A stretch of DNA of 63,819 bases, filler included, from Octopus bimaculoides (lineage: Eukaryota): assembly GCF_001194135.2 (NCBI RefSeq). It is 6 parts of 3 records of this genome, joined end to end, with 100 filler letters (N's around TTAATTAATTAA, not from the genome) between each part and the next. Parts side by side here need not be neighbours in the genome. Positions count along the whole stretch, not along the records: positions 30,862 to 53,661 come from NC_068993.1; 5 more parts are not named here. The stretch is one strand, 5' to 3'. A program made the translations under genes and the position numbers. Below are positions 8,541 to 53,109 of this stretch, piece by piece. Each line of letters opens with the position of its first letter. Positions within the stretch are counted from its first letter, which is position 1. The notes beneath the pieces are model-generated. The model was not told where the DNA came from. It ran no database searches and was given only the letters and a program-made list of their open reading frames with translations.

Positions 8541-8889
8541 TTTTCTGTCTTGAACCCTAGGACTCACCAGACCAGTTACTTGGTTTCTATAGCTTATAAT
8601 TGACGGCATTGACATCGTCATCATCATCATTACCATCTTCATTATCATCGTTCTTGTTGTCATCGTCGTCATCGTCATCATCATTTTAACATCCACTTTT
8701 CTTTGCTTGCATGGGTCAGACAGAGTTTATTGAGAAAGATCTGTCTTTGACCCATGGAAGGTAATGTTTCCCCATGGTCAGACATGTTATGCAGAATATT
8801 AGAAAAGATTGACATTTTGTTACAACAATCACAGAATGTTGAGACAAGGAGACATAAACATAGGCACACACATACATACACACACACAG

Positions 8890-10095: not shown

Positions 10096-12344
10096 ACATA
10101 AATGTAGTATATTCTGTTGTAAATTCTTGTTAGAAATATGAACACAAATGGGTATAAAACACTGCAGTTTTCTCTTCTGCGGACTTCTTCCGCTAACCTA
10201 GCACCACCCCTGCCAAAGATTGACATGTTCCTTGCTTTTAAAGCTGCAGTCAAAGTAACTGAGATTTGTCTCTGCAGAATCATTTTGAGATATAAAATTT
10301 GGCTCTACTCTCTATATCATTATGTGAATAACTTGCCATGTTTTATAGAATAGTGCTACTTAAAATGTACTTTGGTATCAATAACTATAACGGGATGCTA
10401 TGTTTAGTGACTATAACACAGAAGAGTGTGTAACTGGTTACAATACAAACCGATGTATTTAAACAGCATTTAGCAATATATATTTTTTAACTCTTTCCTT
10501 TTTCCCTATCTCTCTCCTTCTTTCTCTCTCTCACTCTCTCCTGTCTTTCTCTCTTTCTATTTTCTCCCCCTCCATCCTTGGCTGTTTTCTCTGCAGTTCA
10601 CTAACATAGCAGATATGGCTTATGATTTCGAGCTAAAGCAACAATATAACAACATTTATGTATAAATTACATCACAGTGTTAGGAAAATTGGAGAACAGT
10701 GAGTGGTAACAGAAATAACTGACACCAGTTTCTTGCACGTCGCAATAGTAACTGAATACCAGTGGCAGCCATCTGGAACAACTACTCTCCTTATTTGTTA
10801 TAATTAGAAGAATATTTTTCACTGCTTTGCTGCACATTGGCGTTCTATTCAACACCCGATAATGCTTATGGCTACTCAAAGCCCTTGATCAACTGACTTG
10901 AAACATTTCCCTTTGTTATTCATTGTATCGTTTAATGTCAGAAAAGCCAACACATAGAGATTTATCACACAAAAGTCTAGTAAAACTTGTGCTTAGTTTG
11001 TGGTGCTATAAAAGAGCAATTCTACTTGCATTGGTGGAGAAGGAGGAGAAGAGAACGAAAGTTTGGCAATTGTTGATTTGATAAAAATTCTATTTTTGAT
11101 TATTTCCTCTATATTTATTTTGTTTGATTTCGTCAGCCCCCTTTTATTCCAGGCAATTCTGCATTTTTTACGGGAGGCTTTTGAAATAGTTAAAATGATT
11201 AAGTCTCGGCAACAGAAATAAATCTTTTGTTTGGCACCGAAATCTGTACAAAATGTAAATCTACCTTTACTGTGAGATCTAAATATCTTTTTTTTTCTTT
11301 TTAGAGAACAATCTAATGACATGACTATATTTTTCCAAGTACATGTTTTGTACTCTTTGGTCCTTTTAATCTAACATTTCATTTCATATCAACTTTTTTT
11401 TTTTTTTCCTTGTTTTTTTTTCCTTTTTCCTTTTCATTTTTCTCTTCAAGAATTTTTGATATTTTGTAGTTTTGAAGATTTTTGAAATTTTGCTTCAGTA
11501 ACTTCTTTAATACAAAAGGGTTAGAAATGACATTCCTGAACCATAAATTAGACATCGTGTACTCTGATTGTTAAAAACAAAGTTCATCTCAGCATCACTC
11601 TCTCAACACATGACTGGCTTATTCAGTAAAATTTTGGTAATTTGACAGGAAGTTAATCAGCTACCATTATTCATTAGTTCACTGCTAATTGCCTGTAACA
11701 ACTCTTTCAAATATGGCAAATATAATTCTCTCTCTCTCTTCTTTCTTTCTTTGTTTCTCTCTTGTTCGTTCTCTCTCTTCCTCTTTGTCTCTCTCTTTCT
11801 TTCTCTCTCAGTTCTTTCTCTCGCTTTTCCAATCAATTTCTTTCTCCTCCTCCTCCTCTCTCTCTCTCTCTACCTACCTCATTTAAACATTTCATATGTG
11901 TCTACAATGAAAGAGGACACACCAGTCACTTTTCTTCTTCTACTACATCATAAATCTGTCTTGTCTAACATGTACATCTATAGATATGACACTGTTAATG
12001 CAAAACTTGTCTAAGTGAAGTTTTCATTGATAAAAAAGATGACACACATATATTCATTTACTAATTAAGAATAGCTCTCAGTATTATTGATACTACAGTA
12101 GTCTTCCAAAGATATGTTGCAATCCTATAATAAGTATTAATTAATTAATTAATGAATTAATTAATTAATTATTTCAAAGCATGATTGGAAATGATAGAAC
12201 TGTTATAACAGGTTTCCAGTAGACAAATCACTGGTTCGTTGTATTTCTAACAGTGAGTGTGATAAGAGAGTGTCTGTAATTCACTGCAGAACAAACATCA
12301 CAAGGAACTTCATTAAAAATGAACACCAGTTTTTTTCAGTTTTT

Positions 12345-12520
12345 TTTACAGGTGTTTGTTATATTTTTTTCCAGAGTTCAAATTCTGCCATGGTTGATTT
12401 GTGCTTTTCATCCTTTTGGGTTTCATAAAATAAGTACCAGTTGAATACTGGAGTTCGATGTAATTGATTAGCTCCCCCCCCCCTGAAATTGCTGGCCTTG
12501 TGCCAAAATTTGAAATCAAA
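12345..12520 (+). mobile_element. Family A SINE, 3' part
   Basis: GAGTTCAAATTCTGCC...TTTCATCCTTTTGGG...GAAATTGCTGGCCTTGTGCCAAAATTTGAAA. Confidence 0.75.
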
Positions 12521-12589
12521 ATATATCGTCATCATTTTATGTCCACATTCCATGCTGGTATGGGTTGGACGTTAGTAGAAGATAAAATG

Positions 12590-12900
12590 CACACACTCAC
12601 ATACACACATACACATACACAGACATACATATGCAGATACACACATATATGCACACACACATACATGTACACACAGACACACACACACATACACACACAA
12701 TACACACACATGCACACACATACACACACATACAAACACCATACACACACATGTACACACAGACACACACACTATACACACACTATACACACACAGATAC
12801 ACACACATACACACATGCATACACACACAGACACACACACATACACACATGCATACACATACATGCATACACATACACGCACACATACATACATCCATAT

Positions 12901-30861: not shown

Positions 30862-31105
30862 AACGTTGTAAAGTTTTGTTAGCAGTTCATGGCTCTCTGG
30901 GAAGGCATTCAACCAGAAGTTAGGAATTTTATCCTTTCCTGGAGACTTCCATTTGCTTGACCTCCTGAGAGCAGATCTTATATCTTCTACCTTAACCCCC
31001 TCCCACTTTTTCTCCTCTAAGGAGTCTAGGTCTGTAGATATTCTATCAATCCAAGGGGCCTTTTCATTGTGTGTTTTATCTTTTGCCCAGATTTTATTCT
31101 AATTC
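30862..31105 (-). mobile_element. R4/Dong-like RT N-terminal fragment, cut by a gap
   Basis: Translates as NKIWAKDKTHNEKAPWIDRI...SKWKSPGKDKIPNFWLNAF...HELL. Confidence 0.75.
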
Positions 31106-31106
31106 C

Positions 31107-31107
<1 letters not shown>

Positions 31108-31196
<89 letters not shown>
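31108..31196. repeat. (ATT)n microsatellite
   Basis: Direct reading. Confidence 0.95.
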
Positions 31197-31197
<1 letters not shown>

Positions 31198-31733
31198 CTT
31201 ATATATTCTCGCGTCCTTTATCTAAGCTTTTTCGTCACACATCCTGTGATCTTTTCAGCGATTCTTTGTCCAACATGTTTCCTGTTGCTCAGTTCTGTTG
31301 TAGTACTAAACAAAACACATCCGAAATTTTTCAGCAAATACGAACATATGGTCAAATTTCTTTTGCCGAACCGGGGTACACCACCTTCTTTGGATTGACA
31401 GCTGTCTCACAGATTTTGGACCCTCTCTCCGTTGAATTATTCGACAACAACTACTTTTTACAGTCGAAGGGTACGTAACCCAAGTCTTTTTCTTTTCTTG
31501 TTCTTTTTCCATTTTTATTCACCTTCCCACATTTTACATCACACTTCTTCCTGTTTTTCTTCTCGTGAGTTCTCATGTACCTGTGAACTGATTCCCAAAG
31601 AGAACAGCCCAAGACTTAGAGCCTTGAGATTGTTTTGAGATACAAGGCGTGTTATAAAGCCCTGCCAAGACACGCGTTTCTACGGCAAGAAACTATTAGT
31701 AGCTCGTGTGTTTATATTATGTACATTAAATGA

Positions 31734-31771
<38 letters not shown>

Positions 31772-32259
31772 TGTGTGTGTGTGTGTGCGCGCGAGCTTGT
31801 ATGTTTATGCATGTATACCTACACGCATATGTCTATGAATATGTATGAAAATATAACTCGTACAAATTTTTAATAGGAAAATATACTGACGAGGCGAAAA
31901 TATTTAACAAATGACTGGAAAATAATTCCGAAGGTGAGAGTAATAAAATCAAAAGATACTATTAAAACAGATCAATATTCCTCAAGAATATCGAATTCAT
32001 CTTAATATTATTAAAGTTGATTCAGAAATGATGAGTTAACACAATTAGTAAAATGGTGGAGACATTCTGCCGCGTTTCTGAGCTGAATTTCTTTCAGGGA
32101 CGACATTGCTTTTCACTATTCCAAGAACGATAAAACAAATATCTGCGAAATACTGGAATTGATTTATACGACTGTGATTTTATTCAAACACCTTGAGTCT
32201 ATGGTAGAAATGGAAATGATTTAAAATTTTTCTCAAATAAGAAAAAGATTTAGACTCAC

Positions 32260-33124
32260 CTAGCATTTTGACGACAGCTTTTCTGGCCTGACTCTGCCTG
32301 TCACCTGGGAAGCATGTTGGATAGCCTTTTCTATTAGCAGAACGATCCGAAAGAGATCTCTGCAGTGTTGACCTCCGAATAGCCAGAGCAATACAAACAT
32401 ACATAACGCTAATAATGGTCATTGGTAGAATGAAAAACAAAAACGCTGAAATACCAAAAAGTGGACTGGAATGGTCAATTTGTTTCAGCGTACATTGAGC
32501 CGATTCTTTAATGGATTTATTTTTCTCATCTTTTACGTAGACAATACCAAATTGAACTGTTAGCGGTATTGCGAGTAATCCAGAGAGAAACCAAATCGCC
32601 ACCAATATTTTAGTAACGCGAGTTAAATTTGATATAGACGGCGCCTTTGTCGGGTGACAAAATGCCATGTATCTTTCAATTGTGAACGCTGTTATCGTCA
32701 GAACAGATGCGCATGTTGTTGTTTCAGATGCCATGTTTCGGAGGTAGCAAAACACCTCCCCGAAAATCCAAGGGTAAGCTGACCAAAATGTATAAATCTC
32801 GAAAGGAAGGCCGAGAATGAGAACAAGTAAATCGGCAACCGCCAAATTGAACAAGTAAATATTTGTTGTAGTTCGCATATATTTTGCTTTAGCAATAACA
32901 ATACAAGTACACACATTCCCTATAATTCCAGTGAAAAATATTATACTGTAGACAATGGTCATGGGAATAACCTTAGTTAATTCCTCTCGTTTCGGACCAA
33001 GTTTTATGTGATTAAGATCAGGCTGCAGAGAATCCTCCCAGGAAATATGCATTCCTTGTAACAGTTTATCAATTAGAACGGAATCATTTAATTTCGCTAT
33101 TAATTGTTTGAAATCATTATCCAT
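32260..33124 (-). CDS. First coding exon (N-terminus, TM1-TM5, ICL3) of a class A neuropeptide GPCR, PRXamide group (capa/pyrokinin/neuromedin-U receptor-like)
   Basis: The translation shows LGPKR before TM1, GN in TM1, NLAVAD in TM2, YPWIFG..FC in ECL1, ASVLTITAFTIERY in TM3, the TM4 Trp, FFILP in TM5 and RKAVVKML at the start of TM6. The start context is caccATGG. The exon ends ATG CTA G|GTGAGT (phase 1 donor, intron starts at 32259), so the last 26 aa of the track ORF 32180..33124 are intronic read-through. Confidence 0.93.
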
Positions 33125-33207: not shown

Positions 33208-33276
<69 letters not shown>

Positions 33277-33300
33277 CCTACCTATCTATCTATCTATCTA
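33208..33300. repeat. (TATC)n microsatellite ~85 bp upstream of the GPCR ATG
   Basis: Direct reading. Confidence 0.95.
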
Positions 33301-33844
33301 CATGTGCATGCGTATGTGTTTATTTACAAGGTTTCTGAGTTCATTTGATTTTTTTCCAATAAGAGGCTTCCATTCCGTTACTCGTTTCACATGGTGCTAC
33401 GATATCTGAAAATAATTGAAGAAAAAAGATAATATTAATGAAATCATGACAGTACAAACATATATTTAACTGACGACACACACCCTTCACATATTCCTGT
33501 ACTTTGAATTCGTTTTAACTCATATATATCACTACTGTATTAGCAAAAAAAAAAAGAACTTTGTCCCCTTCCTATTCCTGTTAATTAGATTTGAACACAA
33601 AACTAAGAGTCATTGAATTACCCATAAAATTTTAGACATGTATTGCGAGGAAAAAATGTTTTTTTTAAAAAATGGTTGCTGCGTTAATAAAGTGAATTGT
33701 TTTAATACATGAATCTAAGTTGCCTCCCCTTGTATCACTCATAAATTCTTCTAGTGGTTTTATTCATAGCTTAATGTCTATAGTAAATCTGCGTCAGATT
33801 ATATAGAATTTCATCGAGGTTACGTTTCTTTGTTCAAATATAAC

Positions 33845-34779
33845 TGTAGGGAGCTCGCATGGCCCTGTCTGAGATTTGAAACCAAATCTACCCACTTGTT
33901 GCTTGTCAAAACAAGCGGGAAATCCTCTCCACACCAGATGAACGATGAGGAAACATTTGAACCGCAAGGACCTGTGCTGGTCAAAGAAATGTCAGTCCTT
34001 TGTTTAGGGTTTGACCTACATTACTGACCATAGTCTATGTAACAGAGATCATTTCCTATCTCTTCCTCTTTTGTGTCAGCCAGATCAAGGAGCAACACCC
34101 TCTTTTGCATCTGCAATGACCAAGAGCAGCACTTACCTTCGCCCTTCGCTCGGCATACGAAGAGAATCTTTCGGCCGCAAGAAAGACGATGCCACCTTTA
34201 TTTTTTCTTCCTTTCTAGTCAGCACCGTTCATTCCTTACTCTTTCACTCTCTACTGACAGCAACTTCTACACTGTCAGCTACTAACCAGCGAGCCAACCA
34301 TTTTGTCACTATCACTAAAATTACTACTGGCTCTCTAACTACCTGTCGGGGAAACGAATAAATACATGTAAATAATATTTCTTCCTTCTTGGTGTCGATT
34401 CTTCGATGTTTACTATTTACTCCGACACGAGATCCTTCAAGCGCTACATTTGGTAGTGGGTTACATCATATCGACCTGATATGGCATGTCACTTCAGCCG
34501 CAACAATTGCTTGGACATGGCTGACGCAAAAGAGGATGTTGCTCCTTGGTCTGGCTGACACAAGAGAGAAAGAGATAGGAAATGCTCTTTATTATATAGA
34601 CTATGGTCAGTAATATAGGTCAAACGCTAAACAAAGAACTGACCTTTTTTTGACCAGCACAGGTCCTTGGCGGTCAAGTGTTTCCTCATCAATCCACCTG
34701 GTGTGGGGTGGATTTTGACAAGCAGCAAGCGGATAGATTTAGATTCAAACCTTAGGCAGCGCCAAGCGAGGTCCCTACA
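33845..34779. mobile_element. Non-autonomous element with ~275-bp inverted arms, TGTAG...CTACA termini and TAAC TSD (Ginger-like ends; left part LTR-like)
   Basis: Arm 33845-~34124 is the reverse complement of ~34510-34779 (56/67 identical over the outer 67 bp by hand count). TAAC occurs at 33841-33844 and 34780-34783. Confidence 0.8.
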
Positions 34780-35802
34780 TAACTAAACATATTTCTCTCC
34801 CGTCTCAGCGAAGTGTTCATGACATCATCTCGGATAAATATGGATAAATTGACACGTTACCATCGGGAAAAGCTGAACTACGCATAAAATGTGTGTGTAT
34901 GTACGTTTGTGTGTGCGTGTGCGTGCGTGTGTGTCGTGTGTGTGTATGCAGCAAATATAGCCAAGTTGTATGAAGATCATGACAAAAGCTTATACAGACA
35001 GAAGAACATATTTAAAGATGCCATGTTATCATTTGAAATAATCTTACGCATGATATAATGACCACAAGGCTAGAGTTGTTTGGATTAATGACAATGTTTA
35101 GTTGCTATTTCATTGTTATGAATTGCTAGCAAGGATACTGCGTTTCGTTTTGCAACAACTACAGGTCTACAAGTAAATTTTGTGTCTTACTTTGTGTTTA
35201 CAGTGCAATTTTCTCACCTTTTTTATAGTTTGTCTACATTTTTTATAGAATTTAGAGCTGGCACTACAAATAACGAACTTCATAAACGAATATATTTATG
35301 CAAAGAATGTGATCAAAGATATAAAAATAGGTAATGGGTGGACTGTATATACATGCTTCAAGTGTTATTACTCTTTCATCAACATCACATCCAACACGTC
35401 AACTATCCACGAACACATTGCTTAAATACTCACTAAGTTTAGCGGTGTAACACAATTGGATAGACCAATTTCCATATTAGGCAAATTTTTGGCAACTGGC
35501 ACGTACATATTAAATGAATAAAGATAGTGGCATAATTCTAGATGTAAGTTGCCTGGGTGATAATACTGGTTGCGTTATGATTCCTATGGTTTCGTAGGCG
35601 TCTATAAAATAAGAAATTTATATAATAGAATTTATATTATAAGAACTTATTAATATCTTGTATGGTTATATTCAGATAGAATTTATACTGATAGATATTC
35701 TGCAAACATCATGATTATATTATAAACTTGTACTGGTTTACGTTGACAGTTAGTGATTATTTTCATTTCAAAAGTACACTTAATTTGCCTCGTAGTGTTC
35801 AC

Positions 35803-35862
<60 letters not shown>

Positions 35863-36441
35863 NNNNNNNNNNNNNNNNNNNNNNNNNNNNNNNNNNNNNN
35901 NNNNNNNNNNNNNNNNNNNNNNNNNNNNNNNNNNNNNNNNNNNNNNNNNNNNNNNNNNNNNNNNNNNNNNNNNNNNNNNNNNNNNNNNNNNNNNNNNNNN
36001 NNNNNNNNNNNNNNNNNNNNNNNNNNNNNNNNNNNNNNNNNNNNNNNNNNNNNNNNNNNNNNNNNNNNNNNNNNNNNNNNNNNNNNNNNNNNNNNNNNNN
36101 NNNNNNNNNNNNNNNNNNNNNNNNNNNNNNNNNNNNNNNNNNNNNNNNNNNNNNNNNNNNNNNNNNNNNNNNNNNNNNNNNNNNNNNNNNNNNNNNNNNN
36201 NNNNNNNNNNNNNNNNNNNNNNNNNNNNNNNNNNNNNNNNNNNNNNNNNNNNNNNNNNNNNNNNNNNNNNNNNNNNNNNNNNNNNNNNNNNNNNNNNNNN
36301 NNNNNNNNNNNNNNNNNNNNNNNNNNNNNNNNNNNNNNNNNNNNNNNNNNNNNNNNNNNNNNNNNNNNNNNNNNNNNNNNNNNNNNNNNNNNNNNNNNNN
36401 NNNNNNNNNNNNNNNNNNNNNNNNNNNNNNNNNNNNNNNNN

Positions 36442-36854: not shown

Positions 36855-37052
36855 AGTATTGGCCAGCAATTTCAGAGCAGAGGCTAAGTCAATTACATCG
36901 ACTCCAGTGCTGAACTGGTACTTCTTTTATCAACCTCGAAAGGAAGAACGGCAAAGTCGATTTTGGCGGCATTTGAACTCAGAAGGTAAAGACGGACGGA
37001 ATAACGCTAACCTTTTTGCCCGGCGTGCTAACGATTCTGCTAGCTCGCCCCT
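36855..37052 (-). mobile_element. Family A SINE
   Basis: GGCAAAGTCGA...ATTTGAACTCAGA...GGCGTGCTAACGATTCTGCTAGCTCGCC. Confidence 0.75.
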
Positions 37053-40000
37053 TAAAATGCTATAAAATATTGAAAATCACTAGAGAGAATTTCATACTCT
37101 AAAAGAAAGATGTTTTATTCATTATAGCCTCTACCTTCACCTGTCACTGTTGTCTCTTAGATATATACACACATTCTCCTAATCCTATCTCATACGGATT
37201 GATATTGGCATATACATACTGGTTAATATGAGATTGTGAAATGCTATTCACTCAGAGATTTTATCAACTTGATATAATGCAGTATATTAAAAAAGAATAG
37301 TATTTTATGGCATAATTATTTGGAGTAAGAAGTGCAGCGCCCATGATCTTTGTAGGTATTGAGACTGGAGTGATAAAGGATGAATGAAAGGAATTCTTAT
37401 CTCATGCTACTGGAGGCAACAGTGCAGCAAGATATAAGGCTATCCTCTATTCAGGGATCCGATTTGAATCCTCTAAGAGAAAGACATTCAAGAGTCAGAG
37501 GTTGGTTCGTTTTGTTTTTAGATATTGAAACAAACTGCTTGCTGGACTGTTGGCTTCTGTAGGTTCCTAATAACGATCTATTCACGAAAGCACAGATAAA
37601 CTGACATCGCATTTTTGGACGCATAACATTGAAGGCTGCCACACTTCTAAAATGGTTCTAACTTAAACTTGTTCATTAGATTTCATTTTCTCATTTTTTT
37701 TCAGCTGATTTGAATTCACATGAGATTCAAAACACGCTTTGCTTGAAAATTCATGAAAATGAAAATTAAAAAAAAATACGTAATAACAAGTGATAAAATT
37801 AACAGGCAGGCAAAAACACAGTAACATTTAATTTTCTTTTCAATTTCAATATTCATATTAAAAATTTTTAGAAATCAAAACAAAACATAATACTCTCGCT
37901 TCTCTATCTCTTCCAATACACTTTATCTCGTTCTCTTTCTGTTTTAGGCAAAAGCATATGCATACAGTCACCATATAAGAATACAGCAAATATTAAGTTT
38001 TAAATCAATTTAAAGTTTCAGACAAATAGTATGAATGATTAGCACTAACAAGCTATCTCAAAATAACACTTTGATTGCTGCAGGCTGTTATATGAGGTCG
38101 TAAAGTGTATGTATTTGTATAGGCTTAGGAGAGTAAATAACAAAATAATGACGCCTATGTTGTAAACGCCCAAGAAACAGTTGAAAATTACGGAGACATG
38201 ATTTTTCGTTCTCTCGAAAGCAAGCTGTTCTTTAATAGCTGTTGAGATCTGACTGATAGCAAAAAACATCTTTATATTAAAATCTTCCAATCGAGTTGTC
38301 TTTTTCTATATAAGAAATGAGGGACCACAATCCATACTACAGTCTTTCTCAAGAGTGTCGGGTGTGACTTCATGCATCTTTGGTTGCTATTTTTAGCAGG
38401 TCAACCAGCGCTGGAGACGCGTCATTACCGATCAAACATAAATGTGATGAACGTCTCTATCTTAGAAACAACTCAGCTTTCCCAGAACGATATTATCGAA
38501 TGTTGCTTTCTTTTCAAGACGATATAATGTTATTTGAAAGCGATGTGACTTCCATTTGTAGCACGCTAAAAGAGCATGTGGAAGCCCCTTCATGGCCTCA
38601 TGTTACTAAGCAAAAAGAGTCACCTATAGGAAATTGTGTGTACATGTATGTAGACACAAAAAGAACTGGTAAAAAATAGTGGCCGCACACAGTGAATATA
38701 TCAGATTGACACTTAGTAAACGTTTTAGATGGAAAAATAGATATGACGTTTCGAGCATGGCTCTTCGATGGATAGAAGAAAAATCTTGAGAAGAGGGAAA
38801 GGAAGAAAGAATAGATAATACAGAGAAAACCACATGTGTTGTTATATAGCTGTGTATGTGTGTTTATACGTATCGGTTTCTGTGTCCTTGTGTGTTATCA
38901 TTAAACGTACAAATTGCTCGTGTGAATAAATCTTCTATGCATGCCTGCAAGTGTGAGTGCATGTTCGCATGTATGTATTCATATGCGTCTACATATCATA
39001 TATATTAATATATAAATGTATAAATACTTGTACGTGTACATATGCTTATCTAGAGGTAATATTTATCTCCACTTATACGTGGCTGTTCTATTAGAACACA
39101 CTTTACTGCAATAGTTGCCATGACAGAAACTTTTACATTGGCATTTTGCTTTCTTGGTTATATCGCTTGCGAGGAGATAAATCTTTACTGTCTCCAGTGG
39201 CAAGACCCCCAGGTCACGTGATTTCGGCCTGATTTGGTCTTATCAATGATGGGCACTCGACCGCTAGAGATAGCAGCGATTCATTTCCCACCAGCGATAT
39301 ACAGATTGACAGTGACAGAACAGGCACTGGTGTTGCGATTAGCTAGTTAGCTTGTAATATATATATATATTAGCGACAGAGGCAGTGTTAATATCGCGAG
39401 GTAATATATTTATCTCCACTTAACATTGGCTATACTATTAGAACAAACTTTACTGCGGTTGTTGCCATGAGAGAAACTATCACATACATGTAGATAACTA
39501 TACATACATATATGTGTGTATACGAAGACATATACATGGATGAATGTGTGCACATATGTGTGTGTGTGTGTGTGTATCTGCCACTTTGTGCGCAGGTATG
39601 TATGTTTAAACATGTATAGTTGTTGTTTAGTTGTTAAATGAAAGATACTTTACCTTTTAGTTTTTTATCTTAAATTTTTAATTACAACAACTCCTCAAGA
39701 GCTAGATGATATTAAAAATGTCACGTGACTCTACTGAGGTCTGAAAGACGATTGAAAATCTTCATATATAAAAGAATAGTAGTAGCAGTAATTTATGAAA
39801 ACTTTCATCAGTCACGTGAGTAGGCACTTTACATTGTTCTTGCCAACCACCAGGTAAATGTAAAGTTTCGTTTCAAAACTAATTTTTTTTTCAGGAATAA
39901 CAATAAAAATTAGATGATTTTTTCAATTTAATTCAACTTTTCGTCTAAAATTAAAAATCAGATGAAAAAATGAAAAAATAAATACAATTATGTTGTTTTA

Positions 40001-43088: not shown

Positions 43089-43320
43089 TAATAATAATTT
43101 TTTCAAATTTTGCTACAAGGCGCAGCAATTTCGAGGTGGGGTGGGATAAACAGAATATATCGATCCCAGTGTTCGGCTGGTACTTATCTTATCTACCCCG
43201 AAAGGATGAAAAGCAAAGTCAGCCGCGGCGGAATTTGAACTCAGAATGTAAAGACGGAGGAAATGTCCTTAAGCATTTTGTCCGGTATACTAACGATTCT
43301 TCAACCAGCCTGCTACCTTA
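42730..43320 (-). mobile_element. Two family A SINEs (42730-42930, 43100-43320) separated by (TAG)n(TAA)n
   Basis: Same motifs in reverse complement. The microsatellite abuts the 3' end of the right-hand copy. Confidence 0.72.
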
Positions 43321-45175: not shown

Positions 45176-45439
45176 TACCCTTTTAGATAGATATACATAC
45201 ACACGCACGAACGCTCACACACACACACACACACACATAATTGTCACTAAATGCAACTAAAGGTGTCAGGACACCTACATTGCTAGATATAAGAGTTAAA
45301 ATGCTCCAATGCTGTAGGGAAAACACATAATTGTATAGGGAGAATTCACAATATATATATANNNNNNNNNNGGACACCTACATTGCTAGATATAAGAGTT
45401 AAAATGCTCCAATGCTGTAGGGAAAACACATAATTGTAT

Positions 45440-45840: not shown

Positions 45841-46915
45841 GTGGTGGTGTGATGTGATGTGGTATTGTATAGTATGGTGGTGTATGGTGTAGTGGTGTGT
45901 AGTATGGTGTGATGGTGTAATGGTGTGTAGTATGGTGTCATGGTGTATAGTATGATGTGATGATGTGTGTGGGGGAGGCGAGAGTAAAGAAAGCAAGGGT
46001 GAGGTGTGGGTTAGGCTGAGGGTGGGGTAGAGGTGGGGAATGTGGGTAGGATGAGGGTGGGGGTAGAGGTGGGGGTATGTGAGAGTGGGTTAAGGGATGA
46101 TATGTGGGTGTGCTGCGATGAATAGGGAAGGTGGGGGTTGGATTGTGTGGGGTGGGGTTACGAGAGAGGGGTGACGATGAAGAGANNNNNNNNNNNNNNN
46201 NNNNNNNNNNNNNNNNNNNNNNNNNNNNNNNNNNNNNNNNNNNNNNNNNNNNNNNNNNNNNNNNNNNNNNNNNNNNNNNNNNNNNNNNNNNNNNNNNNNN
46301 NNNNNNNNNNNNNNNNNNNNNNNNNNNNNNNNNNNNNNNNNNNNNNNNNNNNNNNNNNNNNNNNNNNNNNNNNNNNNNNNNNNNNNNNNNNNNNNNNNNN
46401 NNNNNNNNNNNNNNNNNNNNNNNNNNNNNNNNNNNNNNNNNNNNNNNNNNNNNNNNNNNNNNNNNNNNNNNNNNNNNNNNNNNNNNNNNNNNNNNNNNNN
46501 NNNNNNNNNNNNNNNNNNNNNNNNNNNNNNNNNNNNNNNNNNNNNNNNNNNNNNNNNNNNNNNNNNNNNNNNNNNNNNNNNNNNNNNNNNNNNNNNNNNN
46601 NNNNNNNNNNNNNNNNNNNNNNNNNNNNNNNNNNNNNNNNNNNNNNNNNNNNNNNNNNNNNNNNNNNNNNNNNNNNNNNNNNNNNNNNNNNNNNNNNNNN
46701 NNNNNNNNNNNNNNNNNNNNNNNNNNNNNNNNNNNNNNNNNNNNNNNNNNNNNNNNNNNNNNNNNNNNNNNNNNNNNNNNNNNNNNNNNNNNNNNNNNNN
46801 NNNNNNNNNNNNNNNNNNNNNNNNNNNNNNNNNNNNNNNNNNNNNNNNNNNNNNNNNNNNNNNNNNNNNNNNNNNNNNNNNNNNNNNNNNNNNNNNNNNN
46901 NNNNNATATATATGT

Positions 46916-47260
46916 GGAGGTGCAATGGCCCAGTGGTTAGGACAGCGGACTCGCGGTCATAGGATCGCGGTTTCGATTCCCAGACCGGGCGTTGTGTGTG
47001 TTTATTGAGCGAAAACACCTAAAGTTCCACGAGGCTCCGGCAGGGGATGGTGGCGAACCCTGCTGTACTCTTCCACCACAACTTTCTATCATTCTTGTTT
47101 CTGTTGTACCTGTAATTCAAAGGGTCAGCCTTGTCACACTGTGTCACGCTGAATATCCCCGAGAACTACGTTAAGGGTACACGTGTCTGTGGTGTGCTCA
47201 GCCACTTGCACGTTAAATTCACGAGCAGGCTGTTACGTTGATCAGATCAACTGGAACCCT
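46916..47260 (+). mobile_element. tRNA-derived SINE family D
   Basis: A box TGGCCCAGTGG and B box GGTTTCGATTCC. The body is highly similar to 14185-14440. Confidence 0.85.
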
Positions 47261-48109: not shown

Positions 48110-48300
48110 TAGCTTTGAGGGAAGGAGACGAGTCGATTACATCGAACCAGTACTTGACTGATGCTTCATTTTATCGACTCTAAAAGGATGAAAAGCATAG
48201 TCGACCACAGTGGGATTTGAACTCAGAGCGTAAAGAGCTGGAAGAAATGCCACTAAGTATTTCGTCAGATGAGTTAACGAATCTGCCAGTTCCCCACCTT
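48110..48300 (-). mobile_element. Family A SINE
   Basis: GTCGATTACATCGA...AAAAGGATGAAAAGCATAGTCGACC...ATTTGAACTCAGAGCG...TCTGCCAGTTCCCCACC. Confidence 0.72.
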
Positions 48301-49232
48301 ATCATCCATTGTAGTTCATGGTAATAATTCTTTTGGTGACCATACGCTTCTATAGAATTCTTCTTCAGCTGTTGCTACACTGATTTCTATTTTATTTTAT
48401 TATTATTTCTTGAAAATTGTTTTGGGCGGGAACTGAGCATTTTCTTTTGATTAAAGAATCATTTTCATCTTCAAAGAATTTGCTCTAAGAATCTTTATAT
48501 GATGAAAGCCGTTTTGTAAGTTAAACAGGAACTATTTTTCAGTAGTTATTCTATTTCGCCTCATTTTTTTTTGCTATCTTATATTTCTGTAGTAACTGTC
48601 TCTTTCCATATTTTGCTTTCAGCTCTATCTTTTCTGTATTGATTTCATTAAGGATTGAAAGATATATTTTTATTTTTGTACTTTTACTGTACCTTTGTCT
48701 TCCAGGCTATTTGTTTCGGTTTTTGATGTTCCAGTTTGAAAAGATCTGAAATATTCACATTTATTTATAACTAGTGTGGGAGATACTGAGCTTCAAAACT
48801 ATTTTTGTCAGGCTACTTATCATAAACTCTTAACAGTGTGAATGAAAAATTGAAATACAAACAGAAATTCTATAACTTTTATCAGAGATTAATAAAACCT
48901 GTTTATGACTGTATTTGATTAAAGATCTAAAACCTAATTTTTGACGAGTCTGTGTTCCATGAAATATCTACATACAATAATGAAGCTTTATAAAAGGACA
49001 AGATATAAAGATAAAGTGCAATACATATATAGCAAGTAGATATGCAATACAAATATAATAAATACATATCGAATACATGAGCAGTAAGTACATATACGAT
49101 ACAATTACAACAAATACATATACAAGTTCATATACAATACATTTAAGAATACATATGCATTACATTTACAACAAAATGCATTAACAATGAATATATAAGT
49201 ACATATAATTACATGTACAAGTACGACACATA

Positions 49233-49446
49233 TTCTTTTCAATTCTAGGCACAAGGCCCAAAATTCTGGGGGAGTGGGCCAGTCGATTAGATCGACCCCA
49301 GTACGCAACTGATACTTAATTTATCGACCCCAAAAGGATGAAAGGCAAAATCGACCTCGGCGGAATTTGAACTCAGAACGTAAAGACAGGCGAAATATCG
49401 CTAAGCATTTCGCTCGGCGTGCTAACGTTTCTGCCAACTCGCCGCC
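49233..49446 (-). mobile_element. tRNA-derived SINE family A, best-preserved copy (~215 bp)
   Basis: The head GGCGGCGAGTTGGCAGAAACGTTAGC...GAGTTCAAATTCCGCC has A/B-box-like motifs. The centre is GCCTTTCATCCTTTTGGGGTCGATAAATTAAGTA (resembles Meta/MESC-type SINE cores, from memory), and the tail is CCTTGTGCC. More than 15 copies occur in the window. Confidence 0.85.
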
Positions 49447-50834
49447 TAAGTACAAAAATTATTAAAAAAGAAAAGTACATAGTAGGATTATAATTATATG
49501 GTTTATTTTCTCTTTGAATTCTGAAGATTCTTCACCAGTGGTTAATCAATCGTTTAAAATCTATGAAACCTTAATTATAAATATCATAGGTTAGTTGAAT
49601 AAACATCAAAATATAGTAACTATACAATAGCCAATGATAACCGTACAAAATTCTCAAAATATAACAACCAAAACCAAACAACACATTCAACCAGGTGCAA
49701 TTTCAATAAACCCTCATCTTATTCATTAAATGACAACCGTCTAGCGTCTAGCTAGTGTAAAGCGTAATACTAACCACCGATACAACAATCCAATCTTCGA
49801 CATCGCGTATATGTTTAACAGCCACTTAGTTAAAAAATCTGCTACCATCAATACATATAACCCTGCCACAACTTAAATAGAAAAAAACAATATTACATTA
49901 TCTGGCTGTGTGGCACTTAAAGTGTAGAAATATGCCCCGTAATATTAATCAGAGCACCCTTATAAAACCCATACAAATATCAGTTATTTATCTTAGATTA
50001 TTTTGAAATTTGCTTCTCTGAAACAACCATACCTGGTCACAACTCTGAACAGGCTCCTATATGTAAATATAAATCTTCAAAACATTCTCTATTGCAAAGA
50101 CTAACATCTTCTCCGGATAATATAACACTGTGTGACACAATTTTAATTTTTCTTGTCTTTGGTCCGTAATTTTTTCTTGTCTTTGCTTCTATCCACAAAT
50201 CAAAGGAAATGACTACTATACCTTTCAAAATCTGCTTTTGTGACTTGGAGATGAATGTTTTGAAACGGATCTATTTTCCAGTACATTTCAGACATTCAAC
50301 GCCGAGTTGCCGAAGCAGAAATATCGTATAGTAAATATTGTGCTCAACACCACAAAATTTGCTTGTCATTTGTTTGATCTTAACCACTTGAGCATGTCTC
50401 TTAGTGGCTGACAATATGTGCATCTCTGATTATGAGCAGATCATAACTCTACAACATGTTTTGTGCATATTAACATCAAGCACACACAATTATGTTGTTA
50501 TTTTTTTACTTTCATGTTCATGCTTAAGATATTTCCAAGTAATTTATCTTAACCCGGAACCATGTGGTCGGGAAGCAAACTTCTTATCACACAGCCATGT
50601 CAGCACCAAAATGTTCATATACTTTAGATTTTCGTATATTATTTTACACTTTCCCGCTAAATATTTGTATATATATGTATGGAAAGGTAAGTGTGTATAT
50701 ATGTATGTATGTATGTATGAATGTACGTGTATACATATGAGTGTATGTATATATATAAATTTTCCCCTCTCTCTCTCTGTATATGTATGTGTGCGTGTGC
50801 GCGCGCATTTTATAAAGAGGTTTTATCATTAAAT

Positions 50835-51230: not shown

Positions 51231-53109
51231 AACACAACCACCATCAACAGCAATAATATACAATTTGAAGAAGATAGGTGAATTAATTTAAAGTAGAAAA
51301 GTATAATATGGGAGAATAAAAGAATTAGAGAAAGGAAGAGTGACGAAACGAAATAGAAATAGAATAGAATAAGCGTCGCACCAAAATTATTAAGATAAAA
51401 CTTACTTGGGAATGGATGCGTCTTTACTCTCCCCTTCTCCCCCTTTCGCTTTTTCTCTCTCATCCTTTCTCTAATCCTTTTCCTCTCCCCTTCACCGTTC
51501 TTTAACTGTCCCTCTCTCTTCCATACGCTTCCTCCTTTACTCTCTCGTTACTCACGCGTGACCATCGGCCATCTTTCTTTTCCTAACTTGAATTTCTTTC
51601 TTTTCTTCTGATCAGCTACAAGAGAACAGACGCACCCTTGTTTGTCTCTTGTCAAAGTTTGTTTCTCCAATGTTCGCTACCTCACCTTGTCATGGCTTAA
51701 CAGCCCTGTCCTGTTTTTGTTATCAACTTTGACCCTCCGCAAATCCCAATTTTATTTAATTTGCTTTGCGGGAGCAACTGTTTTTACGAAGGCACATCTT
51801 GTCGTAAATGCTCGAAATGTGGAGTAGATAAAACCGCTGACAACTGATGAAGGGTCGTTCTTTATGTTGCTTGTCTTGTTTTCCATTTGTTTCTTTCGTT
51901 GTTCGCAAAAACGATCGTATTCCACGTTTTCGTATTTCATATTGTTTACGTTCTATGATGTCAGGTCCTGTATCGATATATATATATATATATGTGTATA
52001 TAAATATATATATGTATGTACATATATGTATGTATATATGCATATATATATTATAACAATTTAATTTGTGTTCGTGGGAAGAACCATTTTAACGATGCGT
52101 ACTGCCTTAATTTTTCGAAACGCCGGAGTTTTAATGGTGGCAGCTGATGAAGGGGATGTTTCTATATGGCCTGCTTGTTTGTTGCACCTTGTTTACCATT
52201 TTTGTCCTTGTTGTTTTGCCACGTCATGTACCCAGTTATGTATCTATATGTACATGTGGATGAACGTATATACATACATGTACATATATATCCTTATACT
52301 CATATATTGTTTGTATCACGACAGAACGCACGCGTTACCTTTATACAGNNNNNNNNNNNNNNNNNNNNNNNNNNNNNNNNNNNNNNNNNNNNNNNNNNNN
52401 NNNNNNNNNNNNNNNNNNNNNNNNNNNNNNNNNNNNNNNNNNNNNNNNNNNNNNNNNNNNNNNNNNNNNNNNNNNNNNNNNNNNNNNNNNNNNNNNNNNN
52501 NNNNNNNNNNNNNNNNNNNNNNNNNNNNNNNNNNNNNNNNNNNNNNNNNNNNNNNNNNNNNNNNNNNNNNNNNNNNNNNNNNNNNNNNNNNNNNNNNNNN
52601 NNNNNNNNNNNNNNNNNNNNNNNNNNNNNNNNNNNNNNNNNNNNNNNNNNNNNNNNNNNNNNNNNNNNNNNNNNNNNNNNNNNNNNNNNNNNNNNNNNNN
52701 NNNNNNNNNNNNNNNNNNNNNNNNNNNNNNNNNNNNNNNNNNNNNNNNNNNNNNNNNNNNNNNNNNNNNNNNNNNNNNNNNNNNNNNNNNNNNNNNNNNN
52801 AATATATATATGTATGTACATATATGTATGTATATATGCATATATATATTATAACAATTTAATTTGTGTTCGTGGGAAGAACCATTTTAACGATGCGTAC
52901 TGCCTTAATTTTTCGAAACGCCGGAGTTTTAATGGTGGCAGCTGATGAAGGGGATGTTTCTATATGGCCTGCTTGTTTGTTGCACCTTGTTTACCATTTT
53001 TGTCCTTGTTGTTTTGCCACGTCATGTACCCAGTTATGTATCTATATGTACATGTAGATGAACGTATATACATACATGTACATATATATGCTTATACTCA
53101 TATATTGTT

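What the first reader, a model, noticed from the sequence alone, without database searches (positions are those of the whole stretch)
33841..34783. Inverted-repeat element apparently built from a gypsy-type LTR, integrated with a 4-bp TSD just upstream of the GPCR
Seen: the unit starts TGTAG (33845), ends CTACA (34779) and is flanked by TAAC on both sides. Its first ~280 bp recur inverted as its last ~270 bp (84% over the outer 67 bp). A second CTACA at 34444-34448 is preceded by AATAAA (34357-34362) and followed by TT-TGGTAGTGGG. So 33845-34448 reads like a whole ~600-bp LTR (TGTAG...CTACA) plus a primer-binding site, which pairs over 10 nt with the tRNAi-Met 3' end if three G.U pairs are allowed. 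Known: gypsy LTR elements and Ginger DNA transposons have related integrases, TG...CA ends and ~4-bp TSDs, and Ginger TIRs reach a few hundred bp. Inference: an LTR plus an inverted copy of its own U3 end was integrated as one unit. This could be a non-autonomous TIR element derived from an LTR, a possible gypsy-to-Ginger intermediate. The inverted arm points towards the GPCR ATG ~1.4 kb away, and a read-through transcript would fold into ~270 bp of dsRNA.
Basis: partly seen in the sequence, partly recalled or inferred. Interest (0 to 1): 0.75.

Follow-up and report, generated by a model that had tools for sequence, protein, structure and literature searches.

The report
Rearranged octopus LTR inserted as inverted repeat
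Upstream of an octopus neuropeptide-receptor gene lies an old, neutrally decaying 935-bp insertion: one end of an LTR retrotransposon joined to an inverted copy of its own first 280 bp, probably a one-off faulty cDNA pasted in by integrase and not shown to be a new kind of mobile element.

Summary
The piece is Octopus bimaculoides. At 33845-34779 there is a TGTAG...CTACA unit whose first 280 bp recur inverted as its last 270 bp (82.6%). TAAC flanks it on both sides.

Only one other family copy could be reached, in O. vulgaris. It shows that 33845-~34448 is an LTR. Two direct copies there both start at TGTAG, flank 1.7 kb of non-coding DNA, and a purine tract precedes the second. Homology to the window runs past the LTR through about 60 nt of leader and stops at the junction with the inverted arm.

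The same insertion, with the same flanks, is present in O. sinensis, O. vulgaris and a third, more distant octopod, so it is ancient. It diverges as fast as its flanks, and the arms show no concerted evolution.

The best reading is a faulty cDNA with two U3 ends, inserted once by integrase. This is inferred from one locus.

The "second CTACA" is fused by a 13-bp deletion specific to O. bimaculoides. The tRNAi-Met primer-site claim is weak. TAAC fits neither Ginger1 nor Ginger2 targets.

The "gypsy-to-Ginger intermediate" reading is unsupported. Interest is modest.

The parts
33841..33844 (.). Left target-site duplication, TAAC
   Evidence: Identical in O. sinensis and O. vulgaris. Mutated to TAAA on this side in the third octopod.
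33845..34124 (+). Left arm: LTR positions 1-280 (U3 with a TATA-like motif plus the presumed start of R), starting TGTAG
   Evidence: for the inverted match; both LTRs of L004 start at the same TGTAG.
34036..34042 (+). Decayed TATA-like motif (TATGTAA here; TATATAA in the right arm and in both L004 LTRs)
   Evidence: Alignments A2 and A4. The promoter role is inferred only.
34065..34132 (+). Two 34-bp tandem sub-repeats inside the LTR (three to four copies in the L004 LTRs)
   Evidence: D3; D3.
34125..34448 (+). Rest of the LTR (R-U5), with no counterpart in the right arm. The exact 3' end is uncertain.
   Evidence: Collinear with the L004 5' LTR. No intact 3' LTR was available to fix the end.
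34357..34362 (+). AATAAA poly(A) signal of the LTR
   Evidence: Conserved in O. sinensis and O. vulgaris; GATAAA in L004.
34444..34448 (+). CTACA created by a 13-bp deletion specific to O. bimaculoides; the ancestral text is GTTACA(C/T)CTACACGCTAGA
34449..34509 (+). Primer-binding-site-like TGGTAGTGGG (34451) and about 45 nt of retrotransposon leader, ending ACAATTG
   Evidence: Homologous to the sequence after the L004 5' LTR up to ACAATTG, then unrelated. The primer tRNA was not identified (one search found no tRNA genes).
34509..34510 (.). Junction between the leader and inverted LTR position ~280, with no clear microhomology
   Evidence: Read. The junction is shared by all four species.
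34510..34779 (-). Right arm: inverted copy of LTR positions 1-280, with an 11-bp deletion specific to O. bimaculoides, ending CTACA
34780..34783 (.). Right target-site duplication, TAAC
   Evidence: Conserved in all four species.
32180..33124 (-). Context: first coding exon of a pyrokinin-1 / neuromedin-U receptor-like GPCR, with its ATG 721 bp from the element. The ORF end at 32180 probably runs into the intron.
   Evidence: ORF. (99% to the O. sinensis pyrokinin-1 receptor-like protein, Pfam 7tm_1).

Best explanation
The unit is an ancient, single insertion of a rearranged LTR-retrotransposon DNA copy.

Its left part is the normal left end of the element's double-stranded cDNA: a full LTR (U3-R-U5), the primer-binding region and about 45 nt of leader. 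This is joined head-to-head to a second copy of the first 280 bp of the LTR. The molecule therefore carried the same U3 terminus (TGTAGG...) at both ends.

LTR termini are short inverted repeats (TGTAGG...CCTACA), so the element's integrase could process and join two U3 ends as it does a U3/U5 pair. That would give the 4-bp TAAC duplication.

The rearranged molecule arose in one of three ways (inferred, not distinguished):
- end-joining of two incomplete cDNAs;
- a strand switch onto the displaced strand during plus-strand displacement synthesis;
- concerted integration of two separate U3 ends followed by joining of the free ends.

Since insertion the unit has decayed neutrally. It now has no demonstrated function. 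A transcript that read through it would fold into an imperfect hairpin of about 270 bp.
For: Shown:
1. LTR identity. In O. vulgaris locus L004 the sequence occurs twice in direct orientation (9775-~10450 and 12150-12618). Both copies start at TGTAG. They lie around 1.7 kb with no Pfam domain. AGCAGGGGAGTAG sits directly before the second copy.
2. Homology between the window and L004 runs through the LTR and about 60 nt beyond it, and ends at ACAATTG (34509), which is the arm junction.
3. TAAC flanks both ends and is conserved across species; the chance of such a match is about 0.005.
4. The inverted symmetry ends exactly at the LTR terminus, and the flanks are direct rather than inverted. This argues against a genomic fold-back duplication.
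5. The arm substitutions fit one origin. There are 10 pre-split changes on each arm. Kimura two-parameter (K2P) distances fit an additive tree in which the arms were only about 0.03 apart at the deepest species split.
6. The same insertion is present in four octopod assemblies.

Inferred: the way the two-U3 molecule formed, and the role of integrase.
Against: - It is a single locus. No second example of a two-U3 insertion from this family could be sought.
- The LTR 3' end, the primer tRNA and the autonomous gag-pol partner are all undefined, because the only paired copy has a truncated 3' LTR.
- No empty site was found. Every octopod reachable carries the insertion.
- The third species has a different inner structure, so the ancestral inner layout is not fully certain.
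- Two young insertions of the same family would also have had near-identical arms.
Confidence: 0.6

Rival explanations
1. Two independent events. An LTR element inserted in the plus orientation and a second copy of the same family inserted nearby in the inverted orientation. A later deletion joined the leader of the first to position ~280 of the second. On this view the two TAAC flanks belong to different insertions and match by chance.
For: Nested and adjacent LTR insertions followed by deletions are common in repeat-rich genomes. Both outer boundaries are natural LTR termini under this model too. The junction shows no clear microhomology, as in an end-joined deletion. Arm similarity to each other (86%) is no higher than to the L004 LTRs (84-85%).
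Against: A 4-bp flank match has probability of about 0.005-0.006. The one other insertion seen has TGAG on its left flank, so there is no sign of a TAAC preference. No further family LTR lies within 7.6 kb beyond the right end of the unit or within about 30 kb on its other side in the gap-free O. sinensis locus. The arms were about 3% apart at the earliest visible node.
Confidence: 0.15
2. The 935-bp unit is one copy of a non-autonomous TIR element family (a Ginger-like MITE, or an LTR-derived TIR element) that transposed as a unit. It would have been mobilised by a Ginger transposase or by a gypsy integrase.
For: TGTNR ends, arms of about 270-280 bp and a 4-bp duplication are within the Ginger description. 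Copy number could not be examined, so this is not excluded.
Against: The left part is collinear with LTR + primer region + leader of a paired-LTR element, and that copy has no inverted arm. TAAC in AAATA|TAAC|TAAAC fits neither CCGG/CCGT nor RTATAY. Protein-route searches found no other copy, though those searches see only annotated ORFs.
Confidence: 0.1
3. The ancestral insert was a full palindrome, like the form in the third octopod: a snap-back dimer of a cDNA end. The normal LTR middle in O. bimaculoides, O. sinensis and O. vulgaris would then have been restored later by gene conversion from another LTR.
For: In contig L005, LTR 281-~535 is replaced by an inverted copy of LTR ~535-617 + primer region + leader, giving a palindrome centred near L005 571. 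The two mirrored inner copies are about as diverged as the arms. One site groups the orthologous copy with O. bimaculoides against the mirror copy.
Against: Three sites, including both bases of the junction TTTTG against CTTGG, are shared-derived in the two L005 copies. That points to a duplication within that lineage. This model needs three events. The alternative needs two: break repair primed from the opposite arm, which predicts exactly the segment lost and the segment duplicated.
Confidence: 0.1

Closest known systems
Non-autonomous LTR retrotransposons (LARD/TRIM-like) and their truncated or solo-LTR remnants
   Same: TGTAG start, a direct LTR pair with a purine tract before the 3' LTR in the sister copy L004, an internal region without protein domains, AATAAA in the LTR, a 4-bp duplication.
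   Different: Here the right end is not a U5 end of a direct 3' LTR. It is an inverted copy of the U3 end, joined directly to the leader, and the whole unit is still flanked by one duplication.
Ginger1 and Ginger2/TDD DNA transposons (Bao, Kapitonov and Jurka 2010, PMC2836005)
   Same: TGTNR termini, TIRs of tens to about 270 bp, 4-bp duplications. That paper itself speculates that Ginger TIRs came from two oppositely oriented LTRs.
   Different: The target TAAC fits neither CCGG/CCGT nor RTATAY. There is no transposase and no autonomous partner. The body is LTR + leader of a retrotransposon. No evidence of repeated mobilisation.
Aberrant retroviral or retrotransposon cDNA forms and integrations (my own knowledge, not checked in papers here)
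   Same: An integrase acting on a non-canonical DNA with usable CA ends; rearranged cDNA made during or after reverse transcription.
   Different: I found no described case of a two-U3 inverted insertion fixed in a genome. Two literature searches gave no precedent, but they were shallow.
DIRS-type retrotransposons (inverted terminal repeats)
   Same: Inverted long terminal repeats on a retroelement-derived sequence.
   Different: DIRS elements use a tyrosine recombinase and make no target duplication. Here there is a 4-bp duplication, TG...CA ends, and a sister copy with direct LTRs.
Palindrome growth by break repair within inverted repeats (for the form in the third species)
   Same: The spacer on one side of a break is lost and the other side is copied in inverted orientation, turning a spaced inverted repeat into a near-palindrome.
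   Different: This concerns only the later history in one lineage, not the origin of the unit.

Membership tests
LTR retrotransposon (long terminal repeat) | The sequence occurs as two direct repeats flanking an internal region | tested here: met
   L004: 9775-~10450 and 12150-12618, 86.8% identical over the first ~275 bp (LTR pair K2P 0.141), with 1.7 kb between them. Only one such copy was found.
LTR retrotransposon (long terminal repeat) | TG...CA termini with short terminal inverted repeats | tested here: inconclusive
   The 5' end TGTAG is fixed by four independent boundaries. The 3' end is inferred only: three TTACA/CTACA candidates and no intact 3' LTR.
LTR retrotransposon (long terminal repeat) | Polypurine tract directly before the 3' LTR | tested here: met
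   L004 12137-12149 AGCAGGGGAGTAG, followed by TGTAG.
LTR retrotransposon (long terminal repeat) | Primer-binding site complementary to a tRNA 3' end next to the 5' LTR | tested here: inconclusive
   TGGTAGTGGG matches the tRNAi-Met 3' end (recalled from memory) in only 6 exact nucleotides. It lies 9-10 nt after the CTACA in the undeleted form. It reads TAATAG in L004 and TAGTTG/TAGTGG in L005. No tRNA genes were found in the loci for comparison.
LTR retrotransposon (long terminal repeat) | 4-6 bp target-site duplication | tested here: met
   TAAC/TAAC around the window unit. Not testable at L004, where the 3' LTR is truncated by a LINE.
Gypsy (Ty3) superfamily specifically | Linked gag-pol with the domain order RT-RNaseH-integrase | not testable with these tools
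   No autonomous copy could be retrieved. The L004 internal ORFs have no Pfam match.
Ginger1 / Ginger2 DNA transposons | TGTNR ends, TIRs of 40-270 bp, 4-bp duplication | tested here: met
   These features are shared with gypsy LTR ends, so they do not discriminate.
Ginger1 / Ginger2 DNA transposons | Target specificity: CCGG/CCGT (Ginger1) or RTATAY (Ginger2) | tested here: not met
   The reconstructed target is AAATA-TAAC-TAAAC, against the specificities given in PMC2836005.
Ginger1 / Ginger2 DNA transposons | Multiple copies sharing both TIRs, and an autonomous copy encoding the integrase-like transposase | not testable with these tools
Protein-route searches found only L004, which lacks the inverted arm.
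DIRS-like retrotransposons | Inverted terminal repeats without a target-site duplication; tyrosine recombinase | tested here: not met
   A 4-bp duplication is present, and the sister copy has direct repeats.

The most novel reading that the evidence does not exclude
The 935-bp unit is, or once was, a mobile element in its own right: an LTR-derived element with two U3 ends as terminal inverted repeats, moved repeatedly as DNA by a retrotransposon integrase. That would be a living example of the LTR-to-Ginger transition that Bao et al. only hypothesised. A weaker version is that two-U3 cDNAs are a regular by-product of this family, so that many such inverted insertions exist.
Probability: 0.07. 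Interest if true: 0.8.

Novelty: new variant of a known kind. Interest (0 to 1): 0.33.

Why it matters
If the single-unit reading is right, this is a fixed natural record that a retrotransposon integrase can insert a DNA carrying the same LTR end twice. That is the elementary step needed for an LTR to become the terminal inverted repeat of a cut-and-paste element.

As it stands it is one neutral, decayed insertion. It shows no sign of later mobility or of selection, so it illustrates a possibility and does not establish a pathway.

Two practical points follow.
- Genome annotators should note that the "hypothetical proteins" called in the O. vulgaris sister copy are ORFs in non-coding retrotransposon DNA.
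- A long inverted repeat 0.7 kb upstream of a neuropeptide-receptor gene is a candidate source of hairpin RNA, which small-RNA data could test.

Tried and rejected
- Copy search through proteins. The element ORF 34011-34361 gave one hit, P0126. The L004 internal 230-aa ORF gave only itself. An exhaustive profile search gave only P0126. Annotated proteins therefore cannot reveal copy number.
- DNA scans of JGI metagenomes with two conserved LTR words gave 0 hits and then 2 hits. The 2 hits are unrelated contigs sharing only the 21-mer, a chance match.
I did not pursue it further. There are therefore no RNA-seq, small-RNA or depth data.
- Empty site. The orthologous loci of O. sinensis, O. vulgaris and a third octopod (Logan contigs of SRR11869391 and its sister runs SRR11869384 and SRR11869385) all carry the insertion. 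The next GPCR relative is 64% identical in protein, too far for non-coding alignment. The species behind SRR11869391 could not be identified.
- Selection on the hairpin: rejected. Cross-species identity of the element is 92.4%, against 90.8-92.2% for flanking non-coding DNA. Concerted-type sites (4) do not exceed cross-type noise (4).
- Gene conversion as the reason the arms look young: rejected. The third lineage simply evolves about three times faster (27-28 private changes per arm against 7-9).
- Rfam found no family in the piece. ARAGORN found no tRNA in four loci. Pfam found nothing in the element or in the L004 ORFs.
- Literature searches for a precedent of inverted-LTR insertions gave nothing usable.
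Full report
**What the piece is.** The GPCR exon at 32180-33124 (minus strand) is 99% identical to the O. sinensis "pyrokinin-1 receptor-like" protein. The 935-bp unit is 100% identical in the chromosome-level Octopus bimaculoides assembly (L002; GCA_001194135.2, chromosome CM046613.1). The window is therefore O. bimaculoides. The unit lies 721 bp upstream of the receptor's ATG.

**Checking the observation.**
- TGTAG lies at 33845 and CTACA at 34775-34779. TAAC flanks both sides.
- Arms 33845-34124 and 34510-34779 are 82.6% identical in inverted orientation, E = 4e-80.
- AATAAA lies at 34357, a further CTACA at 34444, and TGGTAGTGGG at 34451.
- The symmetry stops at the TGTAG/CTACA ends, and the flanks repeat directly, not invertedly.
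- A 4-bp flank match is expected by chance about 0.5% of the time.

Two corrections apply. CTACA occurs four times in the unit. The CTACA at 34444 is a fusion product: O. sinensis, O. vulgaris, the third octopod and the sister copy all carry 13 more bases there (GTTACA(C/T)CTACACGCTAGA-TTTGGTAG). O. bimaculoides has therefore lost them. O. bimaculoides also lost 11 bp in the right arm.

**Is the left part an LTR?** Translating the ORF 34011-34361 and searching the protein collection gave a single hit, an O. vulgaris "hypothetical protein" on another chromosome. Its locus, L004, holds the decisive anatomy.
- The sequence occurs twice in direct orientation, at 9775-~10450 and at 12150-12618. The two copies are 86.8% identical.
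- Both copies begin exactly at TGTAG.
- They are separated by 1.7 kb that has long ORFs but no Pfam domain.
- A purine tract, AGCAGGGGAGTAG, abuts the second copy.
- A LINE fragment truncates the second copy. Its remainder is not in the 20-kb locus.

This is a non-autonomous LTR retrotransposon. Homology between L004 and the window runs through the whole LTR and about 60 nt further, ending at ACAATTG (window 34503-34509). After that, L004 continues into its internal region and the window turns into the inverted arm.

The window unit is therefore 5' LTR + primer region + about 45 nt of leader, joined to an inverted LTR 1-280. The LTR carries a TATA-like motif at about position 190 (TATATAA in three of the four old copies) and AATAAA at about position 513. 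The arms therefore hold U3 and the presumed first few tens of nucleotides of R. This assignment is read from the sequence and was not tested.

**The primer site.** The TGG lies 9-10 nt after the likeliest LTR end in the undeleted form. Only six nucleotides match the tRNAi-Met 3' end, which I recalled from memory. The word reads TAATAG in L004 and TAGTTG/TAGTGG in the third species. No tRNA genes were found in the fetched loci for comparison. The primer tRNA is unresolved.

**Age and mode of evolution.**
- The same insertion sits between the same flanks in O. sinensis (L001 7611-8568), in O. vulgaris (L003 7619-8576) and in Logan contigs of an unidentified, more distant octopod (L005; SRR11869391). 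That third species is 88% identical in the coding exon and about 75% in non-coding DNA.
- TAAC is intact on both sides in the three named species. It has one substitution on one side in the third species.
- Between O. bimaculoides and O. sinensis the element is 92.4% identical. Flanking non-coding DNA is 90.8-92.2% and the exon 96.2%. I see no selection on the element.
- Using each arm as outgroup for the other, ten substitutions fell on each arm before the O. bimaculoides/O. sinensis split and 15-17 after it.
- Against the third species, "concerted" site patterns (4) do not exceed noise (4 cross patterns). That lineage has about three times more private changes.
- Kimura two-parameter (K2P) distances between the arms are 0.153, 0.210 and 0.401 in the three lineages. 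Between orthologous arms they are 0.075-0.080 and 0.24-0.25.
- These distances fit an additive tree in which the arms were only about 0.03 apart at the deepest split. The arms were therefore nearly identical when the structure formed, shortly before these octopods diverged.
- The L004 pair (0.141 in the O. vulgaris lineage, against 0.210 for the arms there) is somewhat younger.

**How it most likely arose.** Four facts bear on this.
- The outer end of the right arm is exactly the LTR terminus.
- The flanks are a direct 4-bp repeat. A genomic fold-back duplication would have given an inverted flank.
- The left part is the normal left end of the element's DNA.
- No further LTR of the family lies within 7.6 kb beyond the right end of the unit, or within about 30 kb on its other side, in the gap-free O. 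sinensis locus.

The simplest account is that a DNA molecule carrying the U3 terminus at both ends was inserted once by the element's integrase. LTR ends are themselves inverted (TGTAGG...CCTACA), so integrase could treat two U3 ends like a U3/U5 pair.

How the molecule formed is inferred. The possibilities are head-to-head joining of two incomplete cDNAs, a switch to the displaced strand during plus-strand displacement synthesis, or two-donor concerted integration followed by joining of the free ends. The junction shows no clear microhomology, which mildly favours end-joining. The left part extends beyond the primer site, so it is not simply plus-strand strong-stop DNA. I give this explanation 0.6.

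**Rivals.**
- Two separate insertions plus a deletion need a 0.5% coincidence in the flanks. The one other insertion seen has TGAG on its left flank, so no TAAC preference is evident. I give this 0.15.
- A mobile TIR family (a Ginger-like MITE or an LTR-derived TIR element) cannot be excluded, because copy number could not be examined. However, the body is collinear with a paired-LTR element. TAAC in AAATA|TAAC|TAAAC also fits neither the CCGG/CCGT targets of Ginger1 nor the RTATAY target of Ginger2 (PMC2836005). I give this 0.1.
- A third possibility concerns only the inner layout. In the third octopod, LTR 281-~535 is missing. In its place stands an inverted copy of LTR ~535-617 + primer region + leader. 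The whole unit is then a near-palindrome centred near L005 571.
  - This is what repair of a break in the spacer would give, if the broken left arm primed on the right arm of the same strand. The spacer left of the break is lost and the spacer right of it is copied backwards.
  - Three shared-derived sites in the two mirrored copies, including the junction bases TTTTG against CTTGG, point to an event within that lineage. One site points the other way.
  - That the palindrome is ancestral keeps about 0.1.

**Function.** The minus-strand RNA of the unit folds at -495.6 kcal/mol (z = -31) into an imperfect hairpin of about 270 bp. That is a property of any such repeat. A transcript started from the right arm's own LTR promoter would contain only the R part of the arm, a few tens of nucleotides, so a long duplex needs read-through from outside. 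Rfam has no match. With neutral divergence, I treat the unit as inert DNA until small-RNA data say otherwise.

**Comparison with known kinds.** The sequence works like, and on four tested features belongs to, a non-autonomous LTR retrotransposon family. "Gypsy" is plausible from the TGTNR end and the 4-bp duplication, but it is untested because no gag-pol is linked. The unit resembles Ginger elements in shape only. The one discriminating feature I could test, target specificity, is not met. DIRS-like elements are excluded by the duplication and by the direct-LTR sister copy. I found no described precedent for a fixed two-U3 insertion, though my literature searches were shallow.

**Verdict.** The evolutionary claim of a gypsy-to-Ginger intermediate, the tRNAi-Met primer site and the regulatory role are not supported. 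This is a new variant of a known kind, an aberrant LTR-retrotransposon insertion, of modest interest. The decisive test is a genome-wide search for the junction, which these tools could not run.

Noticed in passing
L005 141-947 (Logan contig of SRR11869391; orthologous to window 33845-34779): In this more distant octopod the same insertion is a near-complete palindrome. LTR 281-~535 is lost, and an inverted copy of LTR ~535-617 + primer region + leader stands in its place, centred near L005 571. This fits break repair primed from the opposite arm of the inverted repeat.
   Followed up: partly
window 34444-34448 and about 34715 (right arm): O. bimaculoides has two private deletions inside the unit. 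The other is 11 bp (TTTCCTGCTTG) in the right arm.
   Followed up: yes
L001 about 8589-8820, next to the element's GPCR-side end (window 33841): A SINE specific to O. sinensis and O. vulgaris (it starts AGGCGGCGAGCTGGCAGAAACGTTAGC) is inserted a few bp from the element's boundary, with a target duplication of about 17 bp (TATAT.TGTACAAAGAAA). A second species-specific insert of about 390 bp (L001 8890-9277) resembles window 46914-47260.
   Followed up: partly
window 36885-37053, 43153-43300, 48131-48303, 49230-49447: A short interspersed repeat of about 170-220 bp recurs at least four times in the piece and five times in the 39-kb O. sinensis locus, at 75-90% identity. It is probably the abundant octopus SINE.
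   Followed up: no
L004 10001-10327, 10703-11200, 11263-11955: Three O. vulgaris 'hypothetical predicted proteins' are ORFs inside the LTR and the G-poor internal region of a non-coding LTR element. They have no Pfam domain and no homologues other than themselves, so they are likely annotation artefacts.
   Followed up: partly
L004 9637-9775 and 12619-13300: The L004 LTR element sits in a LINE fragment (reverse-transcriptase C-terminal region, ...HVMCMDEDSCIKK...). A second LINE copy of the same family, 76% identical, cuts its 3' LTR at 12618.
   Followed up: partly
window 33208-33300; 31069-31478: An (ATCT)23 microsatellite between the GPCR ATG and the element is shared with O. sinensis but absent from the third octopod. 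Long poly-Leu/poly-Ile 'ORFs' downstream of exon 1 are trinucleotide repeats, not genes.
   Followed up: no
window 35863-36441, 45362-45371, 46186-46905, 52349-52800: There are assembly gaps (runs of N) inside the piece. The first lies 1.1 kb from the element, flanked by (CA)n and (TA)n.
   Followed up: no
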